Source of the DNA: Botryllus schlosseri
Taxonomy: Eukaryota
Direction of reading: 5' to 3'
DNA length: 64,000 nucleotides
Assembly (NCBI GenBank): GCA_051294905.1
Contig: CM119377.1
Location: forward strand, 4,340,001-4,404,000
Both the position numbers and the translations under genes were made by a program. This document shows positions 483-31,464 of the stretch, in pieces (the first letter of the stretch is position 1; each line of letters starts with the position of its first letter). The notes below the pieces were generated by a model. The model worked only from the letters and a program-made list of their open reading frames with translations. It had not been told where the DNA came from and searched no databases.

Positions 483-483
483 G

Positions 484-6281: not shown

Positions 6282-9200
6282 ATGAAGACGTTCATTGTCT
6301 TAACTCTTCTATTACTAAATGGTTTCTTCGAAAAAACCGACGGAGGAACTGGATCACCAAAGAATCGAGTAATTTATGAATTGACTGACAAAAATATCGA
6401 AGTAGCCGTCAAGAAGAATTATTTTGTTGTGATATGTTTTTGTGAGTATATAAAAAAGCGTACATAGGTTGTCACGTCGACTATATTTTAAAATTCGATT
6501 GTTCACTAGATTCAGGGAAGTCAAGAACTAGTCGTGAATTTGATCAAACTTTCCTTCAAGTGGCGCAAGAGGTACGCCGGGAGTTTAAATTTATACACTT
6601 CACGCGAATCGACGTTACAAGATATCCTAGGATCGAAAACGAATATAAAATATCGGAGCTTCCTATGCTAAAATTTTATAAGAATGGAAGACATTATGAT
6701 TTCATCGGTAAGAAACTGTCCGAGATATTTGTGTCTGCTTGAAGCGTTTACGGTCAATATCTTTCTAGGGGATAAAAGCGTCAAGCACATTACCACTTGG
6801 ATACACATGGCATTGAACACTCCATTTGTATTGACGTCTGGCTCCCAACTCGATAGTTTAAGGAAAGCAGGAACCGTCATTTTAGGATGCTTTCCAAATG
6901 TATGTTGATTTTTCGTTCGTTAATTCCATAAGCGACAATTATTCATACGGAGAGCTCAAATACTATTACAGGAAAAACCAGCGGACGAATATGACAAATT
7001 TATCAACGCAACACACTGGTTTGTGTCAGCCAAGTACATGCCGTTGCCAATGTTTGCCGTGATAGAAAACGAGGAAACTATGTACGAGTGTGGAGTGGAT
7101 AAAGGATCCGTAACCGTTCTCAAAAGTGTCAGTAAAGCTTGTTGTTTGAATATATTTATTTCAATTCACGTTCAATCCATAATGATTAGTTCGATGGCCG
7201 GGAAAGAGTGACGTATAAAGGATTGCTTACTGACTCCGATCGCCTTCTGCAATTTTGCGAGGACGAGAGTCAACCAGTAGTATTTCCATACGGAAGAGAG
7301 GAGGTAACATAATTTTATTATACGGAACATAATAATTCACACCTTAGGTAGACTGCTGGGTATAGGCCTACGCGTGCAATTGTTTTTGTTTAACTTTGTC
7401 ATGTCACAGTTTACAATGAAATTGACTATGGGAAATGTCAAACATCAACACGTTTTATTCATGGATCCGAAAAGTTACAACTTCAAGGAAACTTACGACA
7501 ACTTCAGAACTGCAGCAAAATCTTTCATGTCAACTCCGGTTAGTGAAAATCGTTGAATATAAGAGTTCGTTAGGAAACTAAAATAATCATGAATATGAAT
7601 ATACGTAGATTTCAAAGATACAATAATAGCGTCATCTATGATGACAGAATATGATACCAGTCGTCTCTGTTTGAATTGTCACATAATAAATGTAGAACTT
7701 CAACCCATTTTCGTCAGATGCAGATCTACGTCAGCGCTGCTTTTCAATGCACCAAAACGTTTTCTGTTATTAAACTAATCTTAGTGATATCATGCTTAAT
7801 GAAAATGTGACTGCGCTGACCACTTTTCTCTGTGGCATTAATATATATTTTCTTACTCCATGTCAGCCATACATAGATCAATGGCTCACCATTCACCAAG
7901 TAGTTAGTCATGTGTGAGTTGTAGCCGTAAGCACATTGCACAGAGGACGGATTCGCAGAATTCCATGGGTTACGCTAGCCTAGCCTCGTGGTAGCCTTGT
8001 GTTCGGATGATGATAGTTCGTTACAACTATCGTTTCATGTTATAAGCGCTGCGTTATACCGTTTCAGGATGACATACAGGTACTATTTATACACGTTGAT
8101 CCGACGCAAGAGGGAATCGATAAAGTTACTTCATTCTTCCACGTCGACGTTACGCGAGATGCACCATGCAATCGCATGACCAAGTTAGATGAATACCATT
8201 CGAGATTTGTACCATCACAGAATGATTTTACCAAGGACGGATTCATATCTTTCACAAGACGAGTATTGCGTGGGAGTGTCAGGGTATGTATGCCAGTTTA
8301 AATGTTTTGAAAGTCGGTTGTGTAGGCATATTCTAATTTTATATGATAAGCTCTGTAGACAATCTAATGGTACTGCTCAACTTAAAGTTGACTCTTTTAT
8401 TCAACGCAAAAGATTTCATAATGTTGCAGGAGGCGTCTGAGTCTTTATATAGCCTATACATATAATCTTAGACCTGCTCACATGGTATAACAGGGATATC
8501 TTTGCCCAATTTCAGCGCACGACACGAAGTGAAGAACTTCCTTCGGATTGGAACAGATACCCTCTCAAAATACTGGTCGGATCCAACTATGAACGCGTAA
8601 CGCGTGAACGTGGAAAGACAGTCTTTGTTATGTATCGTAAGTATAGAATTCATTATATTGGTATCGAAAATCAGAATGTGCTTGAATTCAATTCACATTA
8701 ATTCAATTACTTGAAAGATTAAATAAAGATTAGGGCTCTATACAGTTTCGTCCTTGGTAGACTATTTACTGTGTGTCCCAATTTCAGGATATCGCCCGAC
8801 ACAATCATTAAATGTCATCCCCAATGACACTATTATATACTATATGATTTGGCATGAAATGGCTAAACCTTGTTAATAAACGATCCTTATTCCCAAATTG
8901 TTCATAGGCTATTGGTATTGCTCAATGCTCAAAAATGCTACTTTATATACCTAACGCTTGTGACGATATACCCTTAGCGGCCTTGCTGCTGAGAAAAAAC
9001 TGAGAACGGAGTTTAATAGGTGTTGTCGTACCTACTTGTGCTTTATCACAATACATAATTCACGCAAGCATCCCACATTTGACAGAGATCCCTTACAACG
9101 AGGCGTGTAAGAAGGCACTGCCGGTGATGGACGAAGTTGCGATGAAAAACAATAACAACAACTCGGTTGTCATCGCTACGATGGACGTGAGCAAAAATGA

Positions 9201-10076
9201 TGGCGAAATTGATGTGCATTTCGAATTTCCATCCTTCAAGTTATTTACAAGTGATAATAAAGTAAGGAGAACAGTTTTGAGTTTCCATAGATACGCAATA
9301 TTAACAGTAATAAATATCGTGAACGCGAAAATGAAATATTTTTCGAGTAGATAGAATTGTTGTTGGAGTTATAGAATTTTCTCAATATCGGTTGAGTAGC
9401 CAATACCTAATGATTTCCAAGGTAGTTGCACAGACCTTGCATAAGTACTGACGTAAGTAGCCATGCCAGTTGCCACCACGACTCACAGGCCCCTATTTTT
9501 CCATGTATCGAATTCCCTCATGAAACCGTATAGTGAAGGGTTTGATTATAATTATATTGTACATGCTGTCATTGCTGTGTACTTAAATTGTAGAATGTAA
9601 GTATTTTGGTGAGTCTATCTATACGAATCACAAGTTCATGGAAGTAAATGGCATAGGTTTATTGATGACATGGCTTGGCTATATATATTATGATTTAAGA
9701 TACCAAATGGCGTATAGGCCTACTTCGTGTAACTATAGATACATGACATCTCGTTGACAGTACTGCAAAAACGTTCTGCGTTTTTCACCAGGTTTTGAGA
9801 TTCACGGGAACACAGACTGCCGAAGCCATTCAATCATTTATTGACAGCAACGGGGCGATCCACATTGGGGTATATCATGTTTATTCGTAACTATATTCCA
9901 AAACTTTCTTCGATTTACGTGAATGTGATTTCGTCAGGGCATCGATCCAAAAACCAAACCTGCAAGTATCTACGAATTTGGAGATAAGAAATATCAACTT
10001 TACAAGGATCCAGATGCACTGGATTACGGGAAAATGGAAGAGTTACAGACATCAATTCTTCCGATCGGCAAGCACA
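6282..10076 (+). CDS. PDI module 1 (signal peptide + a-b-b'-a' + linker)
   Basis: Signal peptide MKTFIVLTLLLLNGFFEKTDG. a-site SRTS (6521-6532), a'-site NEAC (9097-9108). Ends at a phase-1 GTGAGT donor, not at a stop. Confidence 0.92.
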
Positions 10077-10390
10077 GTGAGTTAGCTAATTCATTTACGG
10101 TTGTTCGTAAATTAAAAATGATCAAGGTTGCTGGGTAAGAAATTTCCGCGAGAAAGTTAAACCTCGGAAGGTATTATAAGGATAATTGGAGTAATTTGTG
10201 GGGATTACCTGAATGGGATTTTCTGAAGATCACTTGAACAATGAACTGAACAAAAGTGAACAGAGGCGGTCAAGTTGAAAGGCAGTGGCCTACAGAAACT
10301 TGCTCAAGTACGACATTGTGGTGCGAAATGCCAACAAGCTATAAACACCAAATATTATATTTAAATAAGTATCAACAACAACAACAAAAC

Positions 10391-10421
<31 letters not shown>

Positions 10422-10582
10422 GCAACAATAACAATAACAATAGCAACAATAACAATGCCAATAACAATGCCAATAGCAATAACATTACCAATAGCAATAA
10501 CAACCAGTGTTCCCAGTATACTTTCTTCAGTGGAATTTAGCCGGAAATAATTCGCCGGCGGTTCGCGAAAAGGAATGATCTT

Positions 10583-10628
<46 letters not shown>

Positions 10629-13600
10629 TCAGATGTAGTAAACACTGTATACAGTATATCCAAAATAGATCTTGCGGGAGCAGCATCACGCCTCTCCGAT
10701 ACTTCAAAAAGGGAAGCACTTCGTTTTTAACACTATCTGCATGTAATTTAAGTGGACACGACATGGGTAGAAGTTGGCTCCCTCCTGCATGGTGGATGTC
10801 TTTGTATGCGAACAGGCTCGCGTTCATTTCAACATTTGGCGTTTCACTTCGACTCAATTCTTTGTGTTGCCTATACGCACCGTTGTTATAGTCAAAGGAT
10901 ACGAGCCACTGGCCTATAGTTGTTACTTTTAACTTGTGATAAATCTGTAATCAATTTTGTCTTTTATGCGTGCAGATCTACACAATGAGACTAACCGAGT
11001 GTTCGAGATTGACGATGACGGCCTTGCCAGCATTATAAAATATGCAGATTTTTACGTAGTATGCTTTTGTAAGTAAATGCCGTTCAACCTGAGGTGAGTA
11101 GGATCTTTCTAACAAATATTGTCTATGATATAGATTCGGAGAAGTCCAGACGGAGTCGCGAGTTCCAGTCTGAATATTTTAACGTGGTGGTGGAAGTGCA
11201 CAAGACAAACCCGTACATTCGCTTCGCAAGGATTGACCTTGACAAACATCAGCATATTGAGATTAAGCACAAAATTGATGAAATACCGCTGCTCAAGTTC
11301 TATAAGTACGGGCGACACTACGACTACAGAGGTAAAACACTTTTGTGTAGCTGGAATCTCATCATGTTAATTTCGAATGGGCCGTTTACGGTTTGGGAGG
11401 CGTGAACTTTTTAACAAACGGGAATGTCCACCTACAAGGTATAAATCCAATGAACAAAGTCAATTTTCGGTTACCTGTCCATTCAAAGCGACTGTTTGGG
11501 GGATGAGATTCTTCCATGTGCCGTTGCTAGACCGGTGATTTGATGCTGAATTTTGTATGCAGGGATTCCCAAGGCTGATAATATCACCAACTGGATTCAC
11601 GTAGCCATGAATTTACCAGCCATTGTTCCGTCCTCAAGCGAGTTTACAGAAATGAAAAAATTAGGTTCCGTTATCGTCGGCTGTTTTCCAGGAGTGAGTT
11701 GGAATCAATTTGTCGGTCTGCAAGTTTATTTCATCAACACTGGTTCTTTTCCAATAGGAAGCACCACAAGCGGAGTATAAGAAATTTTTGAATGCGAGCG
11801 CGTTTTTCGTTTCTGGTAAAAATCTGCCATTGCCACTCTTTGCTCTGATCAACACGGCGAGGTTGATGAGAGAACTCGGGTTCGCGAAAGGATCAGTGTC
11901 GGTTATTAAGAGTGTAAGTGTCATTTGTGGAAAGTGCTAATCAGTGACATCCAGGTTTCTCAAAGTGCAAGTACCTTGGTCTGATTAATACCTCTCAATC
12001 CTACTGGGATAACTTTTATTGGCTAGCGGTTCGTATATAGAAGTGACTCTCCATCGCAGGCTAATTTGTGATAGTTAACATTCGTGTTGGTTTATTTTTG
12101 AGCTTTGCCAATGACGATATGATTGTATATTGTCTCTTGTATTACGCCATGTTCCTTTTGTAAGCTATCGTTCTATATTCTACGCCAAACATCGGTTTGT
12201 GGGAAAGCGTGACGCGTACGAATTGCCTCCAAATGGTACCAACATATACTCTGTTTGAATTTCCGGCTATTATTTTTAAAAGTTATATTACAATCGCATT
12301 TCTATACGGTGATGGGTAACTTGAAAGTCGAATATCTATTTAGGAATATATAAACACTTCGTTCACTAACACGCCGGGGCCTACGATACAAGCGGAGTTA
12401 TTGCCGTCGAAAAATTTGGATTTGAATAAAATAGTATTTATGGTGGTCACCACTATAATAAATAATTAACGAATTGGTCACCGTAAATACTATTTTATTC
12501 ATGATCCAAATTTTTCGACGGAGATAACTCCGCTTCCACTGGTTGAAACTCAACCAAATTTGATGAACATCGTTTCTACAAACAACCTAACACTTTCATG
12601 GGGTGAACAAAAAATTTTCAAATTTTTTGTTATTTATTTTTATATATTTAAATAATAAATAATATTTATACAATGAATAGAAACTTTCTTCTCATGTAGC
12701 AATGCGGCTACTGGTTGGATTTGAACCAAATTTGGTGTATAGGCTTAAATTAGGTAACCTAACAATTTTATCAAGTAGCCAGTGCGATTTGAGAAAAAAG
12801 TCATTTTTGAAGAGCCCTAATGTACACTTGTTCTTAAACATTTTTTTGTTTGTAAGTTTGAAAACGGAGCGAAATCGGTGTACGGGGGATCAATGTCTGA
12901 CTCGGACAAGCTGCTGAAGTTTTGCGAGGAAGAATCCCAGCCGCTTGTTTTCCCTCACGGTCAAGCTGAGGTATAAGCGGATTAAACTTAACGATTCTAT
13001 GAATAAATGAAGCAATGTATTCATCCGCGTCGATATTCTTTCAGTTTTCTTATATTTTGACGAGACGAGACACTAAACTGCAACACTTATTGTTTATGAG
13101 CCCGAATGATTACAATTTCAAGTCCACTTTCAACAGCTTCAAGGAATCGGCGAAGAAATTCAGAAAATCACAGGTTCGCGATTGAATGAAGTTACGTTTC
13201 GATATATAACATTGTTCGTTCGTTTATTAACATCATTATTCTTTTGTCGCTATCCCAATACAATTACATCGCGATATTATGTGGTATTTATATTGAATAT
13301 TGTTATTATGGTAGTATTATCATGGTCACCATGTATCTAGTACTGAATACATATGTACAGTATTGGACACGTGACAAAGCATGTCACCTGTTATTTGAAC
13401 GTCTGGATGTAAGGTGGAAAATATAGCTCTCTAAAACGTTCTGTTGCATCTGCGTTAATCTACATTCTACAATGTCAGGAGATTTTCGCCTTTATTATTC
13501 GAAAGCATTGTCAGACCTGTCAATACAGCATAAAATGTCTAATCACTAATGCTACTCTTTTAGAGTGACATCGAGGTTTTGTTCATCCACGTCGATACAA

Positions 13601-16600
13601 CGAAGAAAGACATTGAAAATGTTTTGGCGTTCTTTCACGTCGACCCAAAAAAAGACGTGCCTTGCAACAGGATCGCAAAGCCCGACGAATTTCATTCGAG
13701 ATACGTTCCGGAGAAGAAGGATTTGACGGAATCGGGATTCACTGATTTTACGAGACGAGTTTTGGATGGGAAAGTATCGGTGGGTAAATGACCAAGCTGT
13801 GTAATCTAAAGTGACATGAATGTATTTCTTCGGCTTAATTATGAAGTGCTAGGTTTTATTACTTGAAAAGAAATTCATTCAGTAGTTTTGAAAAGTTCAT
13901 TTAGACGTGGGTGTCGCATGCCTTTGATAGCAGGGGTATGGAATCTATTTCGTCAAAAGAGTCATACCCTATGATTTCAATTGTAATTCTGAAAGAGCCA
14001 TATGAGGATTTCTATTTACCATTACGTCACAATTGAGGATTTGTGAAGTCATGGGGACACGTACAATCGAAGTAAACTATGCACAAATACATGTAAATCG
14101 TCTTGTGCACCATATTTGCTGTGTAATCTCGTGTTAATGCCCCACTCAAGCCCGTTGCTCGACGTTTGCACATGCGACGCAATGAAAAACGCCAGTTGGG
14201 CAAGGCACAATTATGCTTAGGTACAGGTTTTGGGAAGCTTTTGCAAGCTTCACATTTTTAATTTTATTTCCCTGAGAGCCAATATGATGTTTTTTTAAAC
14301 TTAAGGCAATTAAAATGTACATTTTACCTCAAAGCAGACAATGGTAGACAACATTAAACATGTGAATTTACTGTTTCTTCCTCAGTAACACACCCTAGTA
14401 CTGTCAGCGACTTTCCAAGGAATCCGCAGCATCCGCGAAGGGAGCCATGGCTAAATTGTTGAACTGGCATTTATGCAGGCTCAATCAGTTCCTATGTACA
14501 GTAATAATATATTTAGCCCACACTCATCGCATATTCTCTTTGCCAATTATGTGTCATATACGTACAGAAAACCGTCCGAAGCGCAGACCTACCGAGCGAC
14601 TGGGACAAATATACTTTGAAGATACTCGTCGGTAAAAATTACGAAGAAGTTACGAGGAAAAAGGGACAAATAGTGTTTGTAATGTACTGTGAGTACACTG
14701 GCATCAATGGGCTCGATCCTCGGAAAATACTAGTCGTTTTTTTCACGATAAGATGTTCCCCAAGTCGACGAATGCAAAAGGGTGATGCCGGTTATGGAAG
14801 AGGTGGCGATGAGATACCGTGGTAACAGCACTGTTACCATAGCGACGATGGACATAAGCCAAAACGACGTCGAAATTGACGTTTTCCAAGAAGTGCCAAC
14901 GTTCAAAATGTTTACCGCGGACAATAAGGTGCACTTTCGAATTTTAAATACTGATATCACACGCGTAAATAATGTTGTGTTCAGATATACCGATTCAATG
15001 GAACCAAGTCGGTGGAAGCCGTAATGGAGTTCATCGATAGCAATGGAGAGAGCGAAACCGATGTGAGTTGATAATTATGTTCAGAGGTAGTCAGCGTTAG
15101 CGTTACTCAATTGCAAGTACAATAGGAAATTTACAAGACAGTATCGTAGAAGTAGGGCTGTTGCCTGGGCGATTCGGTTATGAATCGACTTTATAGGGAT
15201 AGGCAACGTATTCGAGTATATCTTTTTGTGACGTGATAAGATGATGGATGCTATGAAATTTTAAATGTGTAATTTAATGCGGCCGCAAAGAATATGATGT
15301 CAGTCCCTCACCACATCAAATATCATTTGGTAGTTTTTTATTGCACTTTGTGGCAATATTGCGGGTTGATCCCTAGCTCACGGCGTAGTGGTATAATCCA
15401 CAGCTACAACACCAATGGATTGTGGGTTCGATTCTGACCGAGGTCGACTCCAGAATTTCTACCTAAGTGTTAAAGGTTTATCTAGGCTCCTCCTCGCCAT
15501 CTCATCCGTGTAAGCCAGTGGTTCTTAACCTTTTTTCCTCCAGCGCCCCTTTCAAAAATTATCGTGCTCCAGCGCCCCCCACCTCATATTGTAAGGACTG
15601 TATTAAAGACAATGGGCAAGAGGGCCCTAAGCACTTCGTCAGCCCCCTAAAAACGGGTTCTATACCACTACCGAGAAAACCATTACCGAGAATGGACATT
15701 ACCGAGAATGCTATTACCAAAAATGGACATTACCGAGAATGGACAACACCGAGAATGGACAACACCGAGAACGGACATTACCGAGAATGGACATCACCGA
15801 GAATGGCCAGTGCCAAGAATCCAACTTACTGGGACGGAAATTATCGATATTTGCACCTGAGAATCGACACCTAATGTGACAACGTCGTGATGCACATACA
15901 CACGACCTGTACACATGCATAACATGCCTGCATTGCATGTATTGCATTCTCGGTAATGTCCATTCTCGGTAGTGTCCATTCTCGGTAATGTCCATTCTCT
16001 GTGGTGTCTATTCTCGGTAATGGCATTCTCGGTAATGGTTTTCTCGGTATTGACCGGACACCCTAAAAACGATTTTCTTGCGCATTCATAGCGTGATAAA
16101 CCAAACTTCTGCGGGCTTCGCCCCCAAGAACCCCGTCGCGTGATTTCGATTGTCAGCAAAGTTTGTGTGGCCTGGTCGCCCTGGGCGTCAAATTTTTTTA
16201 TAATGCATGAATGAATAGGTGGTAATTGCATATATATGTCGCTATAAACTTTCTATCCTCTCCACCCAGGTAATCAGATTTACTAGTAGCGCTGAGTGAG
16301 CTGTTGTATTAGAAAATGAAGGCCACGTAATTTATAATTGAACATATTCGGGCGTGCCTGTTGGTACAATTAATTTGTTACATGTTGTTATTTTGTTACC
16401 TCTTGTCCGGTATATAGTCAAAAGATATTGAAACGCATAAACGTATTAAACCAATGTAAGCACACGATTCAGAATTGGTATTTCTTAACAGGCAAATAAT
16501 TTTATCTGATGGATGTTATTTGTCCTGTGGGGTGCAGATTGCGACAATACGATAATTCGGCACGAGCGATTTAAGAACCTATGGACAATTAGACTTATAT

Positions 16601-19600
16601 ATATCGAAGATTTACGTCAACATAAGGGCAATCCTCTTCGGCTAAGATTTTCTCGCTGAGGATCTTTTTGACACACTTCTCGGAGTCCCATATTGACCGG
16701 AACTTCTCGTGTCTTCGTGCGTCGTGGCGTGGTAATGTCCGACGCCGGAATGCCTATTACTAATTTCTATAATTATGCGAATTCTTCCGTGGGGGAGTCG
16801 TCAAAACATGATGTGTAATTTATGTTCATTCACCGAAATAATTTAGGGCACCCTTCGAGCTCACGGATTGGGGATTTGGGTTGCAACAGTTTCGGTTCTG
16901 GTAGAGGTCAAAGTCCAGTCGGTCTCTTCGAGACTTTGGTATTGGAAATATTTCGCGCTTTAATCGCGCTCGAGGACCATTCGACTATAATAAACCATTT
17001 AATATTTGTTTGTGGTATATTGAGGGTTAAATCAAGGTTGTTATAACAACAATCGGGCACGGTCTCATACCCTGTGGTTCGAACCATCCCGAATTCACAT
17101 CTGCGATTGGCAATACGGGGAAATTAATGGTATTGGATTTTGTCTTAGTGCTTTGTGTAACTACAAGTAAGTCAACTGAGAATGGGATGCATACATCTGC
17201 TCACATTGAATTTAGTACTGTACCCAGTTATTAATTTTAGCGTGAATGTATTCCAAACAAAGCAACTCATATTATATATTAAAACGTTCATGTAAGGTTG
17301 TGAACCACAACACTTGATAGTATCATCCTCTATGATACGATAAAGAAATATTCTGACGATTTAATTTTGTAGCTCTGAAATACAAGTATATTTAGTTATT
17401 CATTTCGTACACAAAGCTTCAAACCTATTTTATGTACGAGGGGGCTCTAAAAGTACCCGCAATTCGTTTTACATGAATTATAATAATCCATTACATTTAT
17501 TAAAACATATGTAGCAAACATCGTCGAGTAATGCGACCAAAAATTTTGGGATTTGACATGTTCTGTGGAATGTTAATTTGCTCTGAATACTCACTAAGTA
17601 TATGTCTTACTATCACATCATCTACTACGAAGACATTTTTCTTCAGCGCCCCCCATATCGCCCCCTGAGCGTTACCGCCCCCTTCAAAATCGTCAGCGCC
17701 CCTTGGGGGGGGGGGGGCTGGAGGCAAGGTTAAGAACCACTGGTGTAAGCGGTTCCTTATGAAAGCCTAGAAGTGAGCCGTGCTACAAGTCGACAGATAC
17801 GGAATCATAAATAAGGAATATCTGCTTATGCAAATGACCATAGTAGTCGACAAACACCATGAATATACCACAAACAACGTCACGAGTTCATAGAAATGTC
17901 ATTCATACTAACGTGCGTAGTTTTGCACCACATCTTTTGGATATTTACCACACGCTTTTGAACCAATCGAGACTTTCCAGGTTTCCACATTTGAAAAATG
18001 TATAAAAACTAGAATTTTCGTTTATAATTATTGGTGTGAAATAGACGTATAATTTGAGTAAACTCGAAAAAAAAGTCTCTCACAATTCGACAGGAATTAT
18101 TTCAAACAATACTTGATTCGGGTTGGGATACTCGAATCATAGTGCCCGACCCTACAGTCAAGCCTATACTTCCAATGGAAGCATAGAATATGAAAGGTCA
18201 GAAAAGGCGCGAGATACAGTAAATACCAGGGATAATAGCCGCATAAACCTTATTTTACCTGTTTAAATAAACATGCTAAGAGTGAGAAAATGAATAAATT
18301 ATGGATCCGAGGCTTTCGATATCACCCAAGAGTTTCACAGAAGTGATTTGTACCTGATTTGAACTCGATACCGAACAGTAAACACTATGACTTGGACTCG
18401 GTGGTGAATTGAAAGTGACTCGACTTGACTCGAGTCAAAACTATAAAACTAAAATTGACTTGTGACTTGGCTACAACCCTGGTAAACACGTAGAAGCACA
18501 GTTTAAAATCTTTTGCCTGTAATGCAAAATTCTGTCGCGTTTTTTCGTCGTGTTTTCAGGGTATAAACGACGTTCTTGTACTTTGCGTTTCCCATATCTG
18601 TTGGACGCATGCACGCACAATCGCACGCACGCATGCACGCACAATCGCACACCCTTTTGACTAATGTATGCATAAATGATTATTATCGATCATATTTCTC
18701 GCAAGGAGAAAATGGGTGAGGAAGCTATATTCCACTTCCAAAAGCTACCCGAGGATGTCCGAAACCCAGAGGAATTGAGGTACGAAGAGGCGGAGAAGAG
18801 AGAGAAAATGTGGAGCCAGGACGAGATGAAATCCATGGAAAGCGCAATAGACGGTTCTCAAGGTACGTGGGAAACGGACACGAAGGAGTATAGGCCTACT
18901 TCGTTTATTTTATCCCAATCCGCATATATAAATTGAAGCTCAGGCTCCTATCCACCACTCTCAATCCGCATTCTGACTCCACAACACACAGCTTGATGGG
19001 CTGAAAGGTTGGGGTTTAGGGTTGTATACTTAAAACAAGTGATGTACTAAAACACTTATTTTTGACGAATGCCATGTTTTTTCCCATGAAGTTTTACAAT
19101 TATGCCATAATTCCGTAAATACTTTCAAAAATACATGTGGTACACGATACGGAATGGTTGGAGCCTTCGAAATGGTCCTCGGGCTGTTATAGCACGTAGT
19201 TTATTGTATATCATTGGTATGAAATGGATATTCTGATGATGATTATGACCTCCAACTGTAAAATTATTGCACATCCGGTTAACCTGTCCTGAAGCATAAC
19301 GTACCTATTTATTGCGATAGCTACTTATAGGTCCATTGTAATTCAAATCTGGTACGCCCCAGTACACCCCGTACGAGTGGTGCACCCTTTAAACATTATG
19401 GTACACCCTAGGCCTAGGGTGTACGATACACACGGTTGAAGAGCCCTGCGATCCGGCCAAACTATTCTGAAGCGTGAGCTTGCCTATTTATGGTGATAGC
19501 TAGTAAATTGTACACTGTAATGCAAATCTGGTACGCCCCAGTACACCCCATCCGAGTAGTACACCCTTTAAACATGATGGTACACCCCCCGGTTGATGAG

Positions 19601-22600
19601 CCCGGTTCTAGAGCACAAACGCCGACATACAGTTGAAGTGTCATCAAACGAATTATGCCTCGTTTTCAAGGCTTTATATATGCATTGGTGTGTTGCATGA
19701 TTGCTGCATGACATATTGCAGGACTGCATGACAAAATACAAGACACGCAGCACCCGCACGACGGCGTCTACGAGTTGGATAATGTCGCTGTTGAACGACT
19801 GATCAATGAGATGTCTTTCTTGGTCGTTTGGTATTGTAAGTGACGTTTACTACCTCTTTCCATGAGACTCATATTTTGCCGACGATGACGACACAGAAAT
19901 GTCATTTCCACTACTGTGCGTGTAGCTTTTTAACGTATTGGATGCTGTGATAAGATCAATTGAGGTTCGGAAGATTGGACCCGCAAAAGTATTGAAACCA
20001 TAAATAACGTTAATGATTTTCTTTAATTCTTGATGGGAAGTGAAGTATAATTTCATCACTCGAAAATCCGTCTCTCACTGTTTGTTTGTTTGTTTTGGGG
20101 TATTCATGGTGTTTGTCGACTACTATGGTCATTTACACCAGACCGATATTCTTCTTATTTTCCGTAACTGCCGACTTATAGCACGGCCCACCTCTAGTCT
20201 TTTGTAAGACACCGCTGACGCGGATGAGGTGGCGAGGAGGAGCCTAGGTAAACCTCCAACACTTAGGTATCGGAATTCGGAAGTCGACCTCGAACCCGCA
20301 CCCATTGGTGTTGCAGCCGCGGATTATACCACTGCGCTATCTCGCCACCTGTATCTCTAACTGTTCGGACTTGAATCATGTCAGTAAATGCTCCATTCGG
20401 ATTCCATTACTCGAATCATTGTTCCCAGTCCAACAAATGACAACAATAGTCAATTTACGATACTTAGCCTATATAGTTTTTTTTTCGTACAGTAGTTATT
20501 GATTCAATACATTCACAACAGTACAAACGTGAATTATATCGATATATATAATTAGATTCCAAGGAATCCCGTGCTAGCAATGACTTTGAGCGCCTATATT
20601 ACAACGCGGCCGCTGAGCTGCACAAGGAGAACAAGCACATCTGCTTCACGAGAATCAACATTGACAAATACCGAGACATTGAGAAAAAGCACGCCCTGAA
20701 GGAATTACCCATGCTGCGGTTTTACAAGCATGGACGCCATTTCGATTTTGTCGGTAATGGTATTTTGACGCCGACAACCTGATCCTGTTGTGACGTGTCA
20801 TGTTTTGTTAGGAGAGAAAACCGTGCAGCATATCAAGTCATGGGTGCATCTTGCCATGAACACTCCGTTCTTACTGAAAACCAAGGCCGAACTGGAGAAT
20901 TTCAAGAGTACCAGCACCCTTGTCGTGGGTTGCTTTCCCGATGTTAGTGGTGGTATTTTTTCTGGACGTGACCATTCACCAATTTAACAGAACTATTGTA
21001 ATGGAAGGAAGAAGGGCGGTTTATTTTCGCCAGCATCAAACTTGGACATATGGACAAGTATATAATTTTAGTTATGCAATTAGACCAATTAAAGCGAAAT
21101 GCCGGTAATATAATTGTGATAAAATTTGTGAAATGTATCTATTCTCTAACATCAAATCTAATTTGATCTAATCTAATTTCAGGATTTGCTGAAAATGCTA
21201 CAGACTTACTGTATAGTGCGAATCGAGCCAAGCATGCTGTACATACATTTTCCATTTTATGCTCATAAAAACGAATTTTGATTTGATATGATCTTGATTT
21301 TTGTTTTATTTCTTTCTAATTCGGAATATAATTCAATTTCAAAGTTTTCGCGAATCCTGCAATTCAAATTCAAATCTAATCTGAAAAACTGTGTAGCTCT
21401 AACTCTAGTGCTACTAATTTGGAAGTTTACCAGTTGTGCATGTACTACAACTCTGGTCCGAACCGTCGCGGTGCTTTGGTAATATAGATTCTGAAACAAT
21501 CGTAAAGATATCTACTCAGTCCCACTATTTATTCTTCTCCACGTGAACCTATGATGTGCATAACGCCTCGCTGCAATCATTATTTTGAATAGCTTTTTAT
21601 TTGTGTTCTGCATGTTCTGATGTCTGTCCTTGCGTTGACAGGGGAATCCAGAATTGGAATATGGACATTTTTTAAACGCCAGCGCTTTTTACATGCCAGC
21701 CAAGTATTTACCAACGCCCATGTTTGTAATTTTGACAACGAGAAGCCTGGTGCAGGACGCAGGGCTGACGACCGGTTCCGTCGCAGTGTATAAGGTATAA
21801 GATATAACATCTAGGGTTGCATTTAAAACAAATGGTGTTATAAAACACTTTGTTTAAAACATGTTTTGAACAGCGTTTAAAAATCCGTTTAGATCACGTT
21901 ATACAGGGGCTATTTCATGGGGTTGTTATGACTATCCCACTCACAGAAGTGATGAAACTCATCTCAAAACAAATATGTAGTATTCAAAACGCAAATGATA
22001 AAAGTAAACAGTGTTTCCTATAAAACTGATCAACTATAGAATTTGAAGCAGTATAAATGCACTTGGGTAATTGATGCAGAGAAGAGCCTAGGCCTACTTG
22101 AGTTACTCTCGATCATGAAGTCACAAACTTGAATGGCCTCATGATGTCTGAGTATTACCCGAGTTTGATACGTCCAAAAGCATTTTCCACCCATTGGATG
22201 TGTTATTGTTCAGAAATTTGAAGGAGGGGCCAAAGTCGAATACGACGGGTCATTGTCGGACACACACAGACTCTTGGATTGGTTGGAAGACGAGACGACG
22301 CCCATTGTCTTCCCGTATGGAAACACTGAGGTATATTTTTGGATCGCAGCAAAGCGAAATTGGAGAATATTATCTGCATTCGCTTGGTTTTAGTATGCGT
22401 TCCGATTGTCGAGGGGTGACATGAAGATGCACCATATTCTGTTTATGGATTCGAGGGCGCCGTTTTTCAAAGAAACGTTTAGGAATTTCAAAGCCGCCGC
22501 AAAATCGTTTAGAAAGAACCGGGTAAGATGTGGACGTGATCCACCGATCAAGGATAATCCGATAATTATCAACGAAAAAATCAAATACCTCCCCTTCTAC

Positions 22601-25600
22601 TACTTGGAATTGAGTCCAATTTGTGTTGCATCGTCTTTGAAGACAGCTCAACAATTTCATGGGGTTGACAGAAAAATTTGATTTTTTTTAATTTTCCCTA
22701 ATAAATCAAAATTTTGATTGGATCTGCGGAGTCTTATACTTGTTAGAATTGAACCAAATTTGGTGTGCAGCGTTTTTAGGGTAACCTCACAATTTAATCA
22801 GTGAATGGCTGGAATCCAGAAAAAAAGTTATTTTTGAACAGCCCTAGTGGACTGGCACGGGTTTTGGCAAATGCAGAGAAGTATTGATTCGAGTCACGAT
22901 TTTTTAGTGGCTCGACTTGACTCGGGTCATTTTTTAAAATGCGTTTAATGACTCGACTCGACTCGAGTCAATTTGTGTATTGACTCGACTTGTACTCGAG
23001 ACATTGTGCATGACTTGAACCAAGTCATATGACTCGAAACTAGGACGGCCAAGACAGACATTTCATTGTAACTTCGAAGAATAGTAAAGTCACGGGATTT
23101 CGTCTATCACTCCTGATACGTGACAAATAGGACCAGAAGCTGTTAGGACTGAGGAAAATTTCGATAATATGAATCCGATCCACTCTATATCACTCAAGCA
23201 GAGTTGAAAAAGTGGGCCGAACCGGATTGAACTGAAAACTAAACAATAAACATAATGGTTGGGACTCGAGAGTCAAAACACTTTGACTCGGACTCGACCC
23301 TCTTACTAACTAACTTGGACTCGGACTTGACTCGGGGGTGAATTGAGAATGACTCGACTTGACTCGAGTCAAAACTACAAAAGGGAGATTGACTTGTGGC
23401 TCGTAACCTTGTGACTCAGAGATGGAAGTCGGGCCGGGCTTTTCGGGTTCGGGCCGGGTTCGGGCCGGGCTCGGGCCGGGTTCGGGCCCAAAGTTATAAA
23501 AATTATCGGGATTGAATCGGGCCGAATAGTCACTACGAAAAGCATTTGATTTGCAATTTTGTTCGAAAGTGGCACAACTACATATAAAATACACCAATAC
23601 CGTATCACGTATAAGTATGGCAATATCTGTGAATAAATTTTATACGAAGTACGAACCCAGATAAACTTCATTATAAGACGGCGGTGTTAATATTTATTAA
23701 AGAAAGCTTTTAGATGCGCCATAGTGATTTTGTCGTCCATGGTGAATTGCTTTAGGTCTATACGGAAACTAACTTATATTGTATTAGGCTATGTGACAGC
23801 GGTAGTATTGTTATATAGCAGTGTTGGGATCAAGTCACTTCCTTCGAGTCACGAGTCATTTCGAGTCATTGCGCATTTTGACTCGAGTCAAGTCAAGTCA
23901 ATCGATTTTCAAAGGTGACTCGAGTCAAGTCGAGTCAAGTCAAGTCAAGTCACGAGTCAAGTCACAATTCAAGTCAAGTTGCCATTTCGAAGTATGAGGC
24001 ATGATTGCATCATTGCATTTTGCTAGCTGTCTGAAATACATATTGAGTGGTCCCTGATTCTGAACCGCTAAACGAATATAGAGTTGAATATACACGCAAG
24101 CAGGCGCTGTATCGCTCACATATACGTATAACTGGTAAACTACGTTGATAGTCACCAGCCAAAATAGAGAATAGAGAATTGATTGAGAACGAATTGATAA
24201 GATGCAATACATTACCCATTTACAAATTGAGAGACGAACCCGACTGTATCCAGTAACTGTTGAGGCTATTGAAATAATCAATTCTTCGCATAACGTGTGA
24301 ATGCAACGCCCTTTGTATGGATGACAGTTGACTTGTATTTTGAACACACTATTTTTTCTCATCTTGGCCAATTTCATTCCTTTATTGCTTTAATTTAGTT
24401 TAATATTGAACCATTTAATACAGTCCACATTTTGCAAAAAGGATGGTGGAACTAAGTTAACAGTGGGGCTGTTTTCAGCGTATTCTCATTCAGACATATT
24501 AAGTTCTCTTGTCATATGCAAGATTGCTATCGAAAGAAAACAAAGTGAGAGCATTGAAAGCGTTGAAAAGCTCGAAATTTGAATCGTATATCAGCTTATT
24601 TGCTCGCAACAGTTGAAAATTGCTATTTGAACTAGGTTTCGGGCCGAAACGGGCTCAAAACTCTACCGTCGGGTTCGGGCCGGGTTCGGGCTGAACTTGT
24701 CGGGTTCGGGCCGGGTTCGGGTCCGGCTCACCCGGCCCGCTTCCATCTCTGTTGTGACTTGGTTACAACCCTGGACAAATGTAAAGCGTAAATAGATAGT
24801 CTGAACATCTGCATCACTAACCTAATTCTGAGCCTTACCGGGATGTTGTCAAGACCAGTGTTGGTCAGTAATGAAGGACTTATATTTTTTCAGAGTGATC
24901 GAGTAGGTTTTGACTATACTTACGCTCACTTACTCAATGAGGCTATACCTGTGTTGATGGACAGCTTTGAAAGGCTAATCTACTTTCTTCATAAACTCTG
25001 TATTTTGTAAACTATAGAAAAGAGTTTTGGGATGTTTTCATTGGCATAACAACTGCATGGGCGAAAGAGCCGGACATCACGGTAGCCGAATGTAATTTCC
25101 AAAATTGAACAACTCATGTGCATTGTCGTTAGTCATTTTGCATTGATCGCAAAGATACATGTTGCTTTCAGAACTTTATTTCAAACTTCCAAGTAGTTTC
25201 GGTATATCTCCTTAAAAAACTACTTTTAAATGTAATTGAGTAGAAATATACGGCGTCATTGTAACGCTAATTATTTTCCCCATGCACCCCCGTTCGAAAC
25301 AGTGTTCCCCACAAGTCACTTCATTAGAATGGGTCTAAAGTCATGCAATGGGTAATATTTATTTTGTGGGGGCGCAAGAACCGCAAAGTGCCTTTGTTGT
25401 GACGCAGCTTGCTCTACGCCAGGGGTCGCCAACTCAAAACGGGAGCGGGCCACTTTTCAAATCTCATAGAGGCCGCGGGCCGCAAGAATGCAATATCGAG
25501 ACAAATCAGGCCAGACCTTTTGCAACCACGCTGCTTCAGTTATTTATGTCTGTACAACGCTGTGCTCTGGGCGACGGGCATAGTGTCAACAAAAGAAGTA

Positions 25601-28600
25601 ATATGTTATTAGATAAATACAAATTCTACAAAAATATCATGATCATCAATTTAATATTATTTTGAAATATGAGCTGCACATGATACCTGACAACCCTTTT
25701 CAGCGAATAAGGAATCGATATTGGAGCTAGCGAGACACTGTACTATAGGTGAAAGACTATCTCCTCGTAAGCTTGATCCTATGGGTAGCACTAAGCCCTT
25801 TTCTAAGCGTCTCAGTCTTTGCAGTGTCTGGGCCGTTGTACGTCATGGCAATATACCCAATTTCCCATGCCCATTCAGATCAGCTGATTCTCCCTCGATG
25901 GAAAGCTGTAGACACAACATCGCCAAAGCCGTTTCAGCTAGTGAGGAGTAGTGATGTTAGGCGAAAGATGATAGCTTATTTTGAAACAGCAACAACAATA
26001 TTTTGAAACTGGAATTAATTTCAGCAGTTTAGAATGCTTTACTTAGCGTTCTTCTGAAATCTGAAATCAGGTCGCGGGCCGCGGAATATGACCTCGCGGG
26101 CCGCGTGTTGGTGACCCCTGCTCTCGGCTATACTGATCATTCTAAGGTTTTAACGTCGATTTACAGGATGAACTCGAGGTCTTATTTACCCTCGCCGATA
26201 CCAGCAAGCCAGACATAGCCAAGGTCATGTCATTCTTCCACGTAGAGCGGAACAATTTGCCGTGCAATCGCATCGGCAAAGCGGACAAGTTCCACTCGCG
26301 ATTCGTACCGAACAGACGGGATTTCTCGAGACAGGGTTTTGTGGACTTTACGAACGATGTCATGAAAGGGATGGTTCCGGTAAAATGCAATTCTTTGACT
26401 CACTTTGTATATACGTTGTATTTTAGTAGTCACAATATGACTGTAGCGCGTCGTTATAGAATATTTTGATTCTTTCCAATCTACACTGCTCAGAGTTCAT
26501 GGACAAGTTTTATCAGTAGAAGAAGGATTTGTAATTCTCTGTTGATGACGATTGATGATAGTGGGACATTACGAATATCGCGTTTTATGCGTGATGATGT
26601 CGTGAGACGAAACACCATAACCATGACCAAATTCTGTCATGTCTTTCAGCGTAATCATAAAAAATGAGACGGTACAAAATGACTGTGTGACATCGAAATA
26701 ATGCGAACCTTTATTGCAATTCTGTGCAATTCGCAGATTACTTGACAAAAAAGGGGTCAATACTGTTCTCAATTTTACTGTCTATGAGATTCATTTGCTA
26801 TTTCACTCGTAAAAAGACTTAACGCAATACCTATAAAAGGTATGTTATCTCAAGAAATTCCAATGATTGCCAGTACGAGGTCGACGTAGAATATTGTGAC
26901 TATCCATCAATCAAAGAGAGCCAGCGATGTTGCATATAGATACCACACTAAAATGCGGTCACACTGAAAACGAAATCCGTGCATTTGTAAAGATTTTCAA
27001 CATAGCGCCAGATGCTTATCATGTCACCGGCACTTTCAGTGAAAACTCATATTTCACAGCCAGAACAGTTATTGTGTATGTTGCCGTTTACCTTTACACC
27101 TCGATGACATATGCCTTCGTAAGGTGGTACAGTAAGCACACCAGATTTTGCTCTCAGATTGTTACATACCATTTATGCGACATCATTGAAAACGCACTTT
27201 ACTTCTATGCTTGATTATAAACTTCCAACTACCATTCCAACCCTCCGCTTATTTCAAGCGTACTATTCTGTCCGAACGACTCCCGGACGATTGGGACAAA
27301 TATCCCTTGAAGATACTGGTGGGCTCCAACTATGAACAAGTCACGAGACTGAAAGGAAAAGCCGTGTTTGTTGCGTACTGTGAGTATAGAAGGCGATACT
27401 TTGATAACTTTTGGAGCTGCAACGGCACTTTTTCAAAACGTTCGTGAACCTTTGTTTCGTTTGTGGATAGGTTGAAGTTAGCGTCAAAGCATTTTAACGA
27501 ACTCTGACTCCGACTAGAGAGGATGGTATAAAATTTTTGTGACTCCGACTCTGCAGCCTTGGCCATAGGTATTAGTAATATTACTATTACTATTACGGTA
27601 CTATATTTAAAACAAGTTGAGTGACGCTCATCACAACACTAGGTTTTTGGGTCCCACTTATACGATCACAAACAAGGGTAATCATATATTCGAAACATCT
27701 AAATTCTGAATCATTCAGTACTGTCTTATGTATTTTCGTTATTGTCTTACCACGGTAGAGGTAATACAATAATCGCAAGTTAATATATTCAACACGGCGA
27801 AGGATAGTTTGACTAAACTGCTTGGATATTCGGAAATTTTCGAAAACGCAATTCAAAGATGCTCTCAAAATTTTTCATCCCTGAAATCACCTTTTCACGA
27901 TAAGATGTAATTTTTCGTGTATAGACATCCCCGAGCACGCAGAGTGTGAAAGGTTACTGCCGGTCGTCGACGAACTCGCGATGAGATACAAGGACAACAA
28001 GACTGTCATCATTGCCGCTGTCGACGTGAGCAAGAATGACGTAGATATAGAAGTTCACACGGAATACCCGTCTTTCCGACTCTTCACTGCCGATAACAAG
28101 GTTCGTTTCTTCGGCATATCAAATGAAGTCGAAGTTCGTCGAAGTTTACTTCACCCCGGAGATAATTGGATGCGATTGTCAGCTTCGAACCTCGGATAGG
28201 ACATATGTTATCCCTACATATGGCGACACGTTGCTCTAAGTTGGCCAACCGAAACTACGAGCCCGAATTCTAAGACCCAGGTCACCAAATCTGTCTGCGA
28301 AGAATGGTTTTTGAACACTGGTGTTGAATTTTCCACTAAGAAGGGAATCAGTTCATTCTCTCTTTTAGATAAAAGCTCTCAGAGGTGAAAAATCTCTTAA
28401 CACCATGATGGCCTTCATCGATGCCAACGGAGCACCCAACTACATGGTGAGTGATCCAGGATACTTTTGTTTTGCAAATTTTCCAAATATCCCGACTGCC
28501 CCGCGAACGCATCTGGCCTTTTCCCGTTGTAGGACTTCGATTCGTATAGTCGCGGTAAAGGAGGCTACGAGTACGAAGAACAGGCTTACGGCACGTATGA

Positions 28601-31346: not shown

Positions 31347-31379
31347 AGATACCTTCAAACGCCTACGTAATATCTGTCG

Positions 31380-31385
31380 TTTATT
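31380..31385 (-). terminator. Candidate polyadenylation signal of the Jagged-like gene
   Basis: TTTATT on the plus strand. It was the only minus-strand AATAAA I noticed between the Jagged stop (32072) and the PDI stop. Confidence 0.35.
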
Positions 31386-31464
31386 TAATCATTTCTTTTT
31401 TTAGCAATGTCGATGGTGATTTCAACGGGAAGGGTGTGCATTCTTATCTGTAAGCTAGAGATGC

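What the first reader, a model, noticed from the sequence alone, without database searches (positions are those of the whole stretch)
6521..27947. All six catalytic sites inactivated in the same PDILT-like pattern
Aligned to P4HB FYAPWCGHCK, the a domains read SRTS, SRRS and SRAS (both Cys to Ser). The a' domains read NEAC, VDEC and HAEC, losing the nucleophilic Cys and keeping only the buried one. The pattern is held across three otherwise diverged modules with intact frames, so it predates triplication and looks selected. It parallels vertebrate testis-specific PDILT (SKQS/SKKC), a redox-inactive chaperone. Non-site Cys in GCFP (b) and PCNR (b') are also kept in all three modules.
Basis: partly seen in the sequence, partly recalled or inferred. 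Interest (0 to 1): 0.7.

Follow-up and report, generated by a model that had tools for sequence, protein, structure and literature searches.

The report
Triple-module catalytically dead PDI-like gene
A sea-squirt gene strings three complete copies of a protein-folding enzyme (PDI) into one 1,597-residue secreted-pathway protein, and all six chemical active sites are dismantled yet kept under selection, so it most likely binds or holds other proteins and does no redox chemistry.

Summary
Aligned with real PDI, PDIA2 and PDILT sequences, the CGHC columns read SRTS/SRRS/SRAS in the three a domains and NEAC/VDEC/HAEC in the three a' domains. The protein has no CxxC anywhere.

New here:
- The three modules are one 33-exon gene (6282-28709, + strand) with a single signal peptide. 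Exon lengths are the same from module to module, and linker exons join the modules in frame.
- The buried catalytic Glu and the Trp before the site are also lost in all six domains. The cis-Pro is kept.
- Synonymous sites are saturated while pN is only 0.31-0.33, so this is old purifying selection and not decay.
- The closest relatives are single-module proteins of other tunicates (Ciona, Clavelina, unnamed assemblies). They lack the catalytic Cys too, so inactivation long predates the triplication.
- In the maximum-likelihood tree, gnathostome PDILT groups with PDIA2 and not with the tunicate clade. The PDILT likeness therefore looks convergent, although an AU test does not exclude shared origin (p 0.05-0.12).
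- The His-rich tail ending in xEL that the relatives carry was not found here.

Function (redox-independent chaperone or scaffold) is inferred. Transcription as one mRNA is untested.

The parts
6282..28709 (+). Whole gene: 33 coding exons, 4,797 nt of coding sequence, 1,597 aa from the ATG at 6282, stop TAG at 28707-28709
   Evidence: Exons, all GT-AG: 6279-6441, 6510-6707, 6769-6899, 6972-7127, 7190-7303, 7410-7538, 8068-8283, 8516-8636, 9086-9261, 9792-9869, 9938-10076, 10976-11068, 11134-11331, 11563-11693, 11758-11913, 12857-12970, 13045-13173, 13564-13779, 14568-14688, 14753-14928, 14985-15062, 18706-18862, 19722-19835, 20556-20753, 20812-20942, 21642-21794, 22214-22330, 22394-22522, 26167-26379, 27259-27379, 27925-28100, 28369-28446, 28533-28709
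6282..6344 (+). The only signal-peptide-like N-terminus (MKTFIVLTLLLLNGFFEKTDG)
   Evidence: Read from the sequence. Modules 2 and 3 have no Met plus hydrophobic start of their own.
6282..9869 (+). Module 1, domains a-b-b'-a' (exons 1-10)
   Evidence: Aligns end to end with PDI-family proteins (25-28% identity, E 1e-42 to 1e-56) and with Ciona and Clavelina relatives (36-38%). Pfam Thioredoxin hits on the a and a' exons.
9938..10076 (+). Linker exon T1 (GIDPK...PIGKH). Phase-0 acceptor, phase-1 donor; joins module 1 to module 2.
   Evidence: Similar to the tail exon T3 (YEFGDKKYQLYKDPDALDYG against YEYEEQAYGTYEDPFKMNYG).
10976..15062 (+). Module 2, domains a-b-b'-a' (exons 12-21)
   Evidence: Exon lengths 198, 131, 156, 114, 129, 216, 121, 176, 78 are identical to module 1. 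52-53% amino-acid identity to module 1.
18706..18862 (+). Linker exon T2 (EKMGEEA...AIDGSQ). Phase-0 acceptor (tandem AAGGAG, so 18706 or 18709), phase-1 donor.
   Evidence: Resembles the acidic tail of Clavelina (EEAEKREKMWSQDEMKSMESAI against EEEEERRAKWEKEEKEILKNAI).
19722..28446 (+). Module 3, domains a-b-b'-a' (exons 23-32), with a 3.6-kb intron at 22523-26166
   Evidence: 47-48% identity to modules 1 and 2.
28533..28709 (+). Tail exon T3 (DFDSYS...ALKDIEGAP, then stop). It keeps a phase-1 GT at the position where T1 and T2 splice onward. No His-rich terminal exon ending in xEL was found downstream.
6521..6532 (+). a domain of module 1: SRTS in the CGHC columns
11145..11156 (+). a domain of module 2: SRRS
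20567..20578 (+). a domain of module 3: SRAS
9097..9108 (+). a' domain of module 1: NEAC (only the second Cys is kept)
14764..14775 (+). a' domain of module 2: VDEC
27936..27947 (+). a' domain of module 3: HAEC
6885..6896 (+). GCFP Cys of the b domain, module 1 (the same motif lies at 11679-11690 and 20928-20939)
   Evidence: Also GCFP in Ciona and ACFP in Clavelina.
8164..8175 (+). PCNR Cys of the b' domain, module 1 (the same motif lies at 13660-13671 and 26260-26271)
   Evidence: Present as P-C-x-R in every relative seen.

Best explanation
This is one gene of an ascidian. It encodes a signal peptide followed by three complete PDI-type modules (a-b-b'-a', twelve thioredoxin folds in all), joined by two short acidic linker exons.

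Shown:
- All six active sites lack the nucleophilic Cys.
- All six also lack the buried Glu and the Trp before the site.
- All six keep the fold-defining cis-Pro.
- The modules arose by an old internal triplication of a single-module gene that was already catalytically dead. That gene belongs to a family seen so far only in tunicates.
- The modules have been kept under purifying selection since.

Inferred:
- The protein cannot act as a dithiol oxidoreductase or isomerase.
- It works as a redox-independent binder, that is a holdase chaperone or non-catalytic scaffold. It would use its three b'-type domains multivalently, much as PDILT does, or as PDI does when it serves as the non-catalytic subunit of prolyl 4-hydroxylase and MTP.
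- The linkers come from the first tail exon of the ancestral gene. Their phase-1 donors now splice into a new phase-1 acceptor just after the former signal peptide of the next copy.
- Because the terminal His-rich exon ending in xEL that relatives carry was not found, the protein may leave the ER.
- The single conserved a' Cys could tether partners by a mixed disulfide.
For: Gene model: 33 GT-AG exons with matching phases, no stop, and module exon lengths 198/131/156/114/129/216/121/176/78 repeated three times. Module 3 reads 153/117 and 213 at three of these places.

Active sites and auxiliary residues. The buried Glu is replaced by C/C/W in the a domains and M/M/A in the a' domains. The Trp is replaced by K/K/E and Y/Q/E. 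The cis-Pro is kept in all six.

No CxxC anywhere.

Selection: pS 0.78-0.84, pN 0.31-0.33, and the codon-position identity pattern.

Family: the b' exon profile finds only 41 proteins among 1.84 billion representatives. The full-length ones are Ciona, Clavelina and the transcript-like P0008, all single-module and all without catalytic Cys. Loci L001 and L003-L007 each show a single module in the stretch held.

Tree: the modules form a clade (99/97) inside a tunicate clade (100/100).

Fold: the Clavelina relative models as four thioredoxin folds (pLDDT 77). Its best PDB matches are human PDI in C-P4H-II, in MTP and alone, then PDILT 5XF7. TIGR01130 aligns end to end.

PDILT biology: it has no oxidoreductase activity, binds non-native peptides, and carries SKQS and SKKC (PMC4894388).
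Against: No transcript evidence for this species was obtainable, so the single-mRNA reading rests on splice phases and on the lack of separate starts.

No activity, binding or localisation was tested.

The b' binding pocket was not examined residue by residue.

A terminal exon could have diverged beyond recognition, or could lie beyond the part searched (the sensitive scans went to 37-40 kb, the tail tblastn over the whole window). In that case the protein would still be ER-resident.

A lone C-terminal Cys of a thioredoxin motif is normally buried, so its role as a tether is speculative.
Confidence: 0.7

Rival explanations
1. The tunicate family, this gene included, is the true orthologue of vertebrate PDILT. 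On this view the SxxS / xxxC pattern is inherited from a common ancestor of tunicates and vertebrates and is not convergent.
For: The residue pattern is the same in the same columns. NCBI names the Ciona protein 'PDI-like protein of the testis'. The AU test does not reject a tunicate+PDILT clade (p 0.0525 and 0.122). Both a' domains replace the buried Glu with Met.
Against: The maximum-likelihood tree joins 11 gnathostome PDILT sequences to PDIA2 at 100/99, inside a vertebrate P4HB/PDIA2/PDILT group (93/91). The tunicate clade lies outside all canonical PDIs. Published work places the PDIA1-subfamily duplications in the last common vertebrate ancestor (PMC5722932). The other tunicate relatives have Ser, not Cys, at the a' position, and N, not S, at the first a position. 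PDILT keeps APW and the Arg, which the tunicate family lacks. Both groups sit on long branches, which favours artefactual attraction in the constrained tree.
Confidence: 0.15
2. These are three separate tandem genes and not one. Each module would be its own transcription unit, and the linker exons would be the 3' ends of modules 1 and 2.
For: Tandem duplicates are common. The relatives are single-module. There are no transcript data. A fused gene model of ordinary PDIs exists in the database (P0012), which shows that such fusions can be artefacts.
Against: Module 2's first coding segment has no signal peptide, and its only in-frame Met gives MRADLHNE. Module 3's first in-frame Met lies inside the a domain. 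Both segments begin at good acceptors in phase 1. The preceding linker exons end at consensus donors (A|GTGAGT, G|GTACGT) in phase 1, with no stop in frame. The terminal exon that closes the reading frame in relatives is missing after T1 and T2.
Confidence: 0.1
3. The protein keeps a thiol-based function through the conserved a' Cys. It might form a regulated mixed disulfide with clients or a partner (thiol-mediated retention or covalent multimerisation). Passive binding would then not be its whole function.
For: The a' Cys is kept in all three modules and in locus L002 (DDGC), although everything else around the site was lost. Each module carries three family-conserved Cys, an odd number. PDILT is reported to engage in disulfide-dependent interactions (title of van Lith 2005, cited in PMC4894388).
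Against: Ciona, Clavelina, P0008, L003, L004 and L006 have Ser or another residue at that position, so the family does not need this Cys. By general thioredoxin-fold knowledge, the second Cys of the motif is the buried, poorly reactive one. The residues that tune thiol reactivity are gone.
Confidence: 0.2
4. A decaying pseudogene array left over from duplicated PDI genes.
For: All catalytic residues are lost. There is no ER-retrieval tail. Transposon-like repeats sit in the introns.
Against: 4.8 kb of open frame runs across 33 exons with intact splice sites. Synonymous sites are saturated while replacement divergence is only 0.31-0.33. Structural positions such as the cis-Pro and core hydrophobics are conserved. 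Relatives are expressed or annotated in other tunicates.
Confidence: 0.03

Closest known systems
Tunicate single-module 'PDI 2-like / PDI-like protein of the testis' predictions (Ciona intestinalis XP_026693694 / UPI0005217E81; Clavelina lepadiformis XP_076808897)
   Same: Same family: 35-38% identity over a whole module, and a 100/100 clade. Same a-b-b'-a' order. No catalytic Cys. The same GCFP and PCNR Cys. An acidic tail carrying a W-x-K/E-E-x-K motif, to which the linkers here are related.
   Different: They have one module of 590-600 aa, a His-rich tail ending in HHEL or FDEL, and Ser in place of Cys at the a' site. The window gene has three modules and keeps the a' Cys. No such tail was found for it. 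These proteins are automatic predictions; I found no paper on them.
Vertebrate PDILT (crystal structure 5XF7; b' domain paper PMC4894388)
   Same: A four-domain PDI-like protein with SxxS in the a domain and only the second Cys left in the a' domain. The buried Glu of a' is replaced by Met. It is glycosylated, acts as a non-catalytic chaperone, and has a C-terminal extension.
   Different: PDILT keeps the Ser of SxxC, the APW before the a' site and the Arg. It passes the TIGR01130 cut-off (366 bits against 168 for the tunicate relative). It has one module and ends in KEEL-type signals. In the tree it is sister to PDIA2 and not to the tunicate clade.
PDI (P4HB) acting as the non-catalytic subunit of collagen prolyl 4-hydroxylase and of MTP (7ZSC, 6I7S)
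   Same: These are the best structural matches of the relative's model (E 2e-44 to 2e-41). In these complexes PDI is generally held to act without needing its active sites (my own knowledge, not checked in a paper here), which is the kind of role proposed for this gene.
   Different: P4HB has two working CGHC sites and KDEL, and has one module.
Calsequestrin
   Same: Thioredoxin-fold repeats without active sites, and an acidic character. P0008 gives a weak Pfam Calsequestrin hit (39 bits), and there are structural matches at E about 1e-20.
   Different: Calsequestrin has three domains, not four. The matches are much weaker than those to PDI. The domain order and the a' thioredoxin signature here are PDI-like.

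Membership tests
PDI family, PDIA1-type (a-b-b'-a') | Four thioredoxin-fold domains in the order a-b-b'-a' | tested here: met
   Each module aligns end to end with P4HB, PDIA2, PDILT and oyster PDI. There are Pfam Thioredoxin hits on the a and a' exons. The Clavelina relative has Thioredoxin plus Thioredoxin_6 and a TIGR01130 end-to-end alignment. Its model shows four beta-alpha-beta folds and matches hPDI abb'xa'. The fold was modelled for the relative, not for the window protein.
PDI family, PDIA1-type (a-b-b'-a') | CxxC active site in the a and a' domains | tested here: not met
   SRTS/SRRS/SRAS and NEAC/VDEC/HAEC occupy the CGHC columns. There is no CxxC in the whole protein.
PDI family, PDIA1-type (a-b-b'-a') | Auxiliary catalytic residues: buried Glu, its Lys partner, the Arg, and the Trp before the site | tested here: not met
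   The Glu is replaced by C/C/W and M/M/A. The Trp is replaced by K/K/E and Y/Q/E. The Arg is not kept. The Lys is replaced by R in the a domains and by T/T/A in the a' domains. Only the cis-Pro is kept in all six.
PDI family, PDIA1-type (a-b-b'-a') | Signal peptide at the N-terminus and a KDEL-type retrieval signal at the C-terminus | tested here: inconclusive
   A signal-like N-terminus is present, read by eye with no predictor. The C-terminus reads ...KDIEGAP. No exon ending in xEL was found: the scan for [DEH][DE]L-stop ran to 46 kb, the EL-stop and His-rich scan to 40 kb, the charged-tail scan to 37 kb, and the tail tblastn covered the whole window. Relatives end in HHEL, FDEL or SYEL.
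PDI family, PDIA1-type (a-b-b'-a') | Score above the curated cut-off of NCBIfam TIGR01130 (ER_PDI_fam) | tested here: not met
   The Clavelina relative scores 168 bits and P0008 108 bits, against a cut-off of 344. PDILT scores 366. The spliced window protein could not be submitted.
PDILT | SxxS in the a domain | tested here: met
   SR[T/R/A]S here, against SGPS/SGAS in frog and lizard PDILT and SKQS in human (PMC4894388).
PDILT | Conserved SxxC in the a' domain | tested here: not met
   The Cys is kept, but the first position is N, V or H (D in L002). It is not a conserved Ser.
PDILT | Descent from the PDILT branch (orthology) | tested here: inconclusive
   The maximum-likelihood tree has PDILT+PDIA2 at 100/99 with the tunicate clade outside. 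The AU test of a tunicate+PDILT clade gives p 0.0525 and 0.122, so it is not rejected.
PDILT | Testis-specific, developmentally regulated expression, and partnership with calmegin and calreticulin-3 | not testable with these tools
   No expression data for this species could be reached.
Calsequestrin | Three thioredoxin-like domains with a very acidic Ca2+-binding surface | tested here: not met
   There are four domains per module. The PDI matches are far stronger (E 1e-44 against 1e-20). The Pfam Calsequestrin hit occurs only in P0008 and is weak.

The most novel reading that the evidence does not exclude
The gene encodes a twelve-thioredoxin-fold protein: a catalytically dead PDI concatemer that has lost its ER-retrieval tail and is therefore secreted. 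It would be a multivalent extracellular or late-secretory holdase or scaffold, kept for a very long time in one ascidian lineage. Its one surviving a' Cys per module would be used to tether partners covalently. Because all module junctions share the same phases, whole modules could be skipped in frame to give isoforms with one, two or three modules. As far as I know, no PDI-family protein made of repeated complete a-b-b'-a' modules has been described.
Probability: 0.25. Interest if true: 0.65.

Novelty: new variant of a known kind. Interest (0 to 1): 0.5.

Why it matters
Catalytically dead members of enzyme families show which functions survive without the chemistry. PDILT is the best-known dead PDI, and its mode of action is still unclear.

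This gene gives a second and probably independent case of the same residue pattern. It has three internal replicates that have each been tested by selection for a long time. Together they show which positions matter (cis-Pro, the b and b' Cys, the second a' Cys) and which do not (the rest of the active site).

The threefold concatenation would also be an unusual architecture for the family. With the apparent loss of the retrieval tail, it points to a multivalent binding role that can be tested directly.

It also corrects annotation. The 'PDI-like protein of the testis' label on tunicate proteins is probably a name borrowed from a convergent look-alike.

Tried and rejected
- Module 3's first exon at 20248-20499 ('IVFFSY'): rejected. 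That stretch is a polypyrimidine tract plus acceptor. The real exon is 19722-19835.
- A terminal His-rich exon ending in xEL after T3: none was found. I tried a regex for [DEH][DE]L-stop, tblastn with the tails of Ciona, Clavelina, P0008 and L002, and a scan for charged or His-rich segments.
- A fourth module upstream or downstream: none by tblastn.
- A word-indexed search with Clavelina alone, then with a three-sequence profile. It returned only ordinary PDIs and no further family members, so the second search added nothing.
- Placing locus L002 relative to the three modules: unresolved polytomy on 199 columns. Whether the triplication predates that species is unknown.
- dS and omega by Nei-Gojobori: dS cannot be estimated because pS exceeds 0.75. 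Only pN/pS and the codon-position pattern are reported.
- A RhoGDI neighbour, as for PDIA1-type genes (PMC5722932): I did not search for one with a RhoGDI sequence or profile. The ORF lists of the flanks (>=70 aa for 1-6200, >=85 aa for 28750-46500) show only EGF-repeat exons on the minus strand and unassigned ORFs.
- tRNA origin of the 211-nt repeat: ARAGORN finds nothing.
- The spliced window protein could not be given to Pfam, NCBIfam, structure prediction or the database look-ups, because only contiguous references are allowed. Relatives were used instead.

Full report
**What is there.** The window is AT-rich eukaryotic DNA (about 40% GC, no N). On the + strand, between 6.3 and 28.7 kb, stop-free segments carry three sets of PDI-like coding pieces. 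I enumerated GT-AG pairs that keep the frame and compared the three sets with each other. This gave ten exons per set. From the second exon on, the lengths are 198, 131, 156, 114, 129, 216, 121, 176 and 78 nt in modules 1 and 2. Module 3 reads 198, 131, 153, 117, 129, 213, 121, 176 and 78.

**One gene, not three.**
- Each module's last exon ends at a phase-0 donor just after F-I-D-S/A-N-G (GGG|GTATAT, GAT|GTGAGT, ATG|GTGAGT).
- Each is followed by a short acidic exon with a phase-0 acceptor: T1 9938-10076, T2 18706-18862 and T3 28533-28709.
- T1 and T2 end at consensus donors in phase 1.
- The first exons of modules 2 and 3 (10976-11068, 19722-19835) start at good acceptors in phase 1. Both begin L-H, downstream of where a signal peptide would be.
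- Joined this way, the 33 exons give 4,797 nt with a single stop at the end, which is 1,597 residues from the ATG at 6282.
- The only signal-like sequence is at the very N-terminus. Module 2's only upstream in-frame Met gives MRADLHNE, and module 3's first Met lies inside the a domain.
- Because all junctions of one kind share a phase, skipping a whole module would stay in frame. This is an inference.
- I could not test transcription. The spliced protein cannot be submitted by reference, and no sequence of this species appeared among the database hits.

**The observation.** I aligned the modules by MAFFT with frog P4HB, frog PDIA2, frog and lizard PDILT, oyster PDI and the tunicate relatives.
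- The first CGHC column block reads SRTS, SRRS and SRAS.
- The second reads NEAC, VDEC and HAEC, with no gaps nearby.
- The coordinates are exactly those of the finding.
- PDILT reads SGPS/SGAS and SQEC/SHNC in the same columns. Human PDILT is SKQS/SKKC (PMC4894388).
- The protein holds no CxxC at all and has 15 Cys. GCFP (b domain), PCNR (b' domain) and the a' Cys are the three present in every module.
- The loss goes beyond the Cys. The buried Glu is C/C/W in the a domains and M/M/A in the a' domains. The Trp before the site is K/K/E and Y/Q/E. The Arg is not kept. The Lys partner is R in the a domains and T/T/A in the a' domains.
- The cis-Pro is kept in all six domains.

**Selection.** Pairwise amino-acid identity of the module cores is 47-53%. 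Nei-Gojobori counts give pS 0.78-0.84 (saturated, so dS is undefined) and pN 0.31-0.33. pN/pS is 0.37-0.41, with bootstrap intervals between 0.32 and 0.48. Identity by codon position is 62-65%, 71-73% and 35-39%. Since pS is at its ceiling, true omega is well below 0.4. The a' and b' domains are the most constrained, and the linkers the least (pN/pS 0.65-0.81). This is old purifying selection and rules out decay.

**Relatives.** A profile of the three b' exons was searched against 1.84 billion representatives and found only 41 proteins at E<=0.001.
- The full-length relatives are Clavelina lepadiformis 'PDI 2-like' (556 and 601 aa), Ciona intestinalis 'PDI-like protein of the testis' (an older 703-aa model with an artefactual internal repeat, which I removed for the tree), and an unnamed 588-aa protein from Logan contigs of about 2.1 kb.
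- All are single-module, and none has a catalytic Cys: NQES/DKKS, NKES/DQGS and DHNG/EKKS.
- Genomic loci from unnamed assemblies (L001, L003-L007) also show only one module in the stretch held, again without Cys.
- L002, a 2.3-kb genomic contig with tiny introns, has DDGC in its a' domain. This is followed by an acidic exon, a phase-1 intron at the same place as in T1-T3, and a His-rich terminal exon ending in SYEL.
- Ciona and Clavelina end in HHEL and FDEL.
- No such terminal exon was found in the window, so the protein ends ...ALKDIEGAP.
- Notes from other agents on this genome say it is an ascidian close to Styela clava. This fits my hits.

**Phylogeny.** With 25 rows, and then 33 rows (IQ-TREE, LG+C20 PMSF):
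- The three modules form a clade (100/97 and 99/97).
- That clade is sister to Ciona+Clavelina+P0008 (99/97-98).
- All six form a clade at 100/100, on a long branch outside every canonical PDI.
- Eleven gnathostome PDILT sequences, from shark to bird, form a clade that is sister to PDIA2 (100/99). This lies within a vertebrate P4HB+PDIA2+PDILT group (93/91).
- This agrees with published dating of the PDIA1-subfamily duplications to the vertebrate ancestor (PMC5722932).
- Forcing tunicate+PDILT together costs 19.7 and 14.5 log-likelihood units. The AU p values are 0.0525 and 0.122, so convergence is favoured but not proven.
- Path lengths (module to module about 1.0, module to Ciona about 1.9) make the triplication roughly half as deep as the split from Ciona and Clavelina.
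- L002 could not be placed relative to the modules.
- The second Cys of the a' site descends from the CGHC ancestor. Its presence in the window modules and in L002, and its absence in the Ciona/Clavelina/P0008 clade, is most simply retention here and one loss there.

**Fold.** Pfam finds Thioredoxin on the a and a' exons, and PDB sequence hits are PDIA4 and thioredoxins. The Clavelina relative has Thioredoxin_6 plus Thioredoxin, and it aligns end to end with TIGR01130 at 168 bits. That is far under the 344-bit cut-off, which PDILT passes at 366. Its AlphaFold model, built from a 30-row alignment, has pLDDT 77 and pTM 0.65. It shows four thioredoxin-type folds and a low-confidence tail. Foldseek ranks human PDI first, as the subunit of C-P4H-II and of MTP and also alone (E 2e-44 to 4e-41). 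Next come full-length PDILT 5XF7 (6e-35), ERp57 and yeast PDI. Calsequestrin is much lower.

**How it most likely works.**
- Shown: one reading frame, three complete PDI-like modules, six dismantled sites, long-term constraint, and membership of a family seen only in tunicates that was already inactive.
- Inferred: the protein does no dithiol chemistry and acts as a multivalent, redox-independent binder or scaffold through its b'-type domains, by analogy with PDILT and with PDI's non-catalytic subunit roles.
- Inferred: the linkers are recycled first tail exons, and the protein may escape the ER for lack of the retrieval tail.
- Speculative: the conserved a' Cys may form mixed disulfides.
- I found no paper on this tunicate family.

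**Verdict.** The thing itself is a new variant of a known kind, the catalytically dead PDI-family proteins. Its threefold whole-module architecture is unusual.

Noticed in passing
window 20082-20292 and 30275-30485: A 211-nt inverted repeat, 98% complementary, with arms 10 kb apart. It brackets exons 2-11 of module 3. It looks like two young copies of a short dispersed element. ARAGORN calls no tRNA there.
   Followed up: partly
window 23816-24115 and 29464-29763: A 300-nt direct repeat, 91% identical, with a low-complexity 'SSQVKSSHESS'-like reading. One copy lies in the 3.6-kb intron of module 3 and the other lies downstream of the gene.
   Followed up: no
window 10250-10700: Long AAC-type microsatellites that read as poly-Asn, poly-Thr or poly-Leu/Val depending on frame and strand. 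They lie in the intron between linker T1 and module 2.
   Followed up: no
window 15467-16231: A block of short tandem and palindromic repeats reading 'PRMDITENGHYREWT' on both strands (inverted pair 15697-15789 / 15945-16037). It lies in the 3.6-kb intron after module 2.
   Followed up: no
window 35930-36190 and 38197-38469, minus strand: EGF-repeat-like ORF pieces (CxxxxCxNGGxC). They probably belong to the Notch-ligand-like gene that another note places at 46650-49172, or to a neighbour of it.
   Followed up: no
window 18701-18709: A tandem acceptor, AAGGAG, at the start of linker exon T2. Either AG keeps the frame, and the two choices differ by one Glu.
   Followed up: no
L002:995-1586 (Logan SRR25569774) and the tails of P0043 and P0048: The single-module relatives end in a strikingly His-rich tail (for example HYHADVDQNIGDHVAEAIKAQDPDGAHEHDPIHHVIGHDHSYEL) placed before an xEL end. 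It could bind metal. No trace of it was found in the window gene.
   Followed up: partly
P0012 (1,002 aa): A database protein with two to three PDI-like b' stretches and working CGHC sites. It looks like a gene-model fusion or an internal repeat artefact of ordinary PDI genes. It is a reminder that multi-module PDI models in databases need checking.
   Followed up: no
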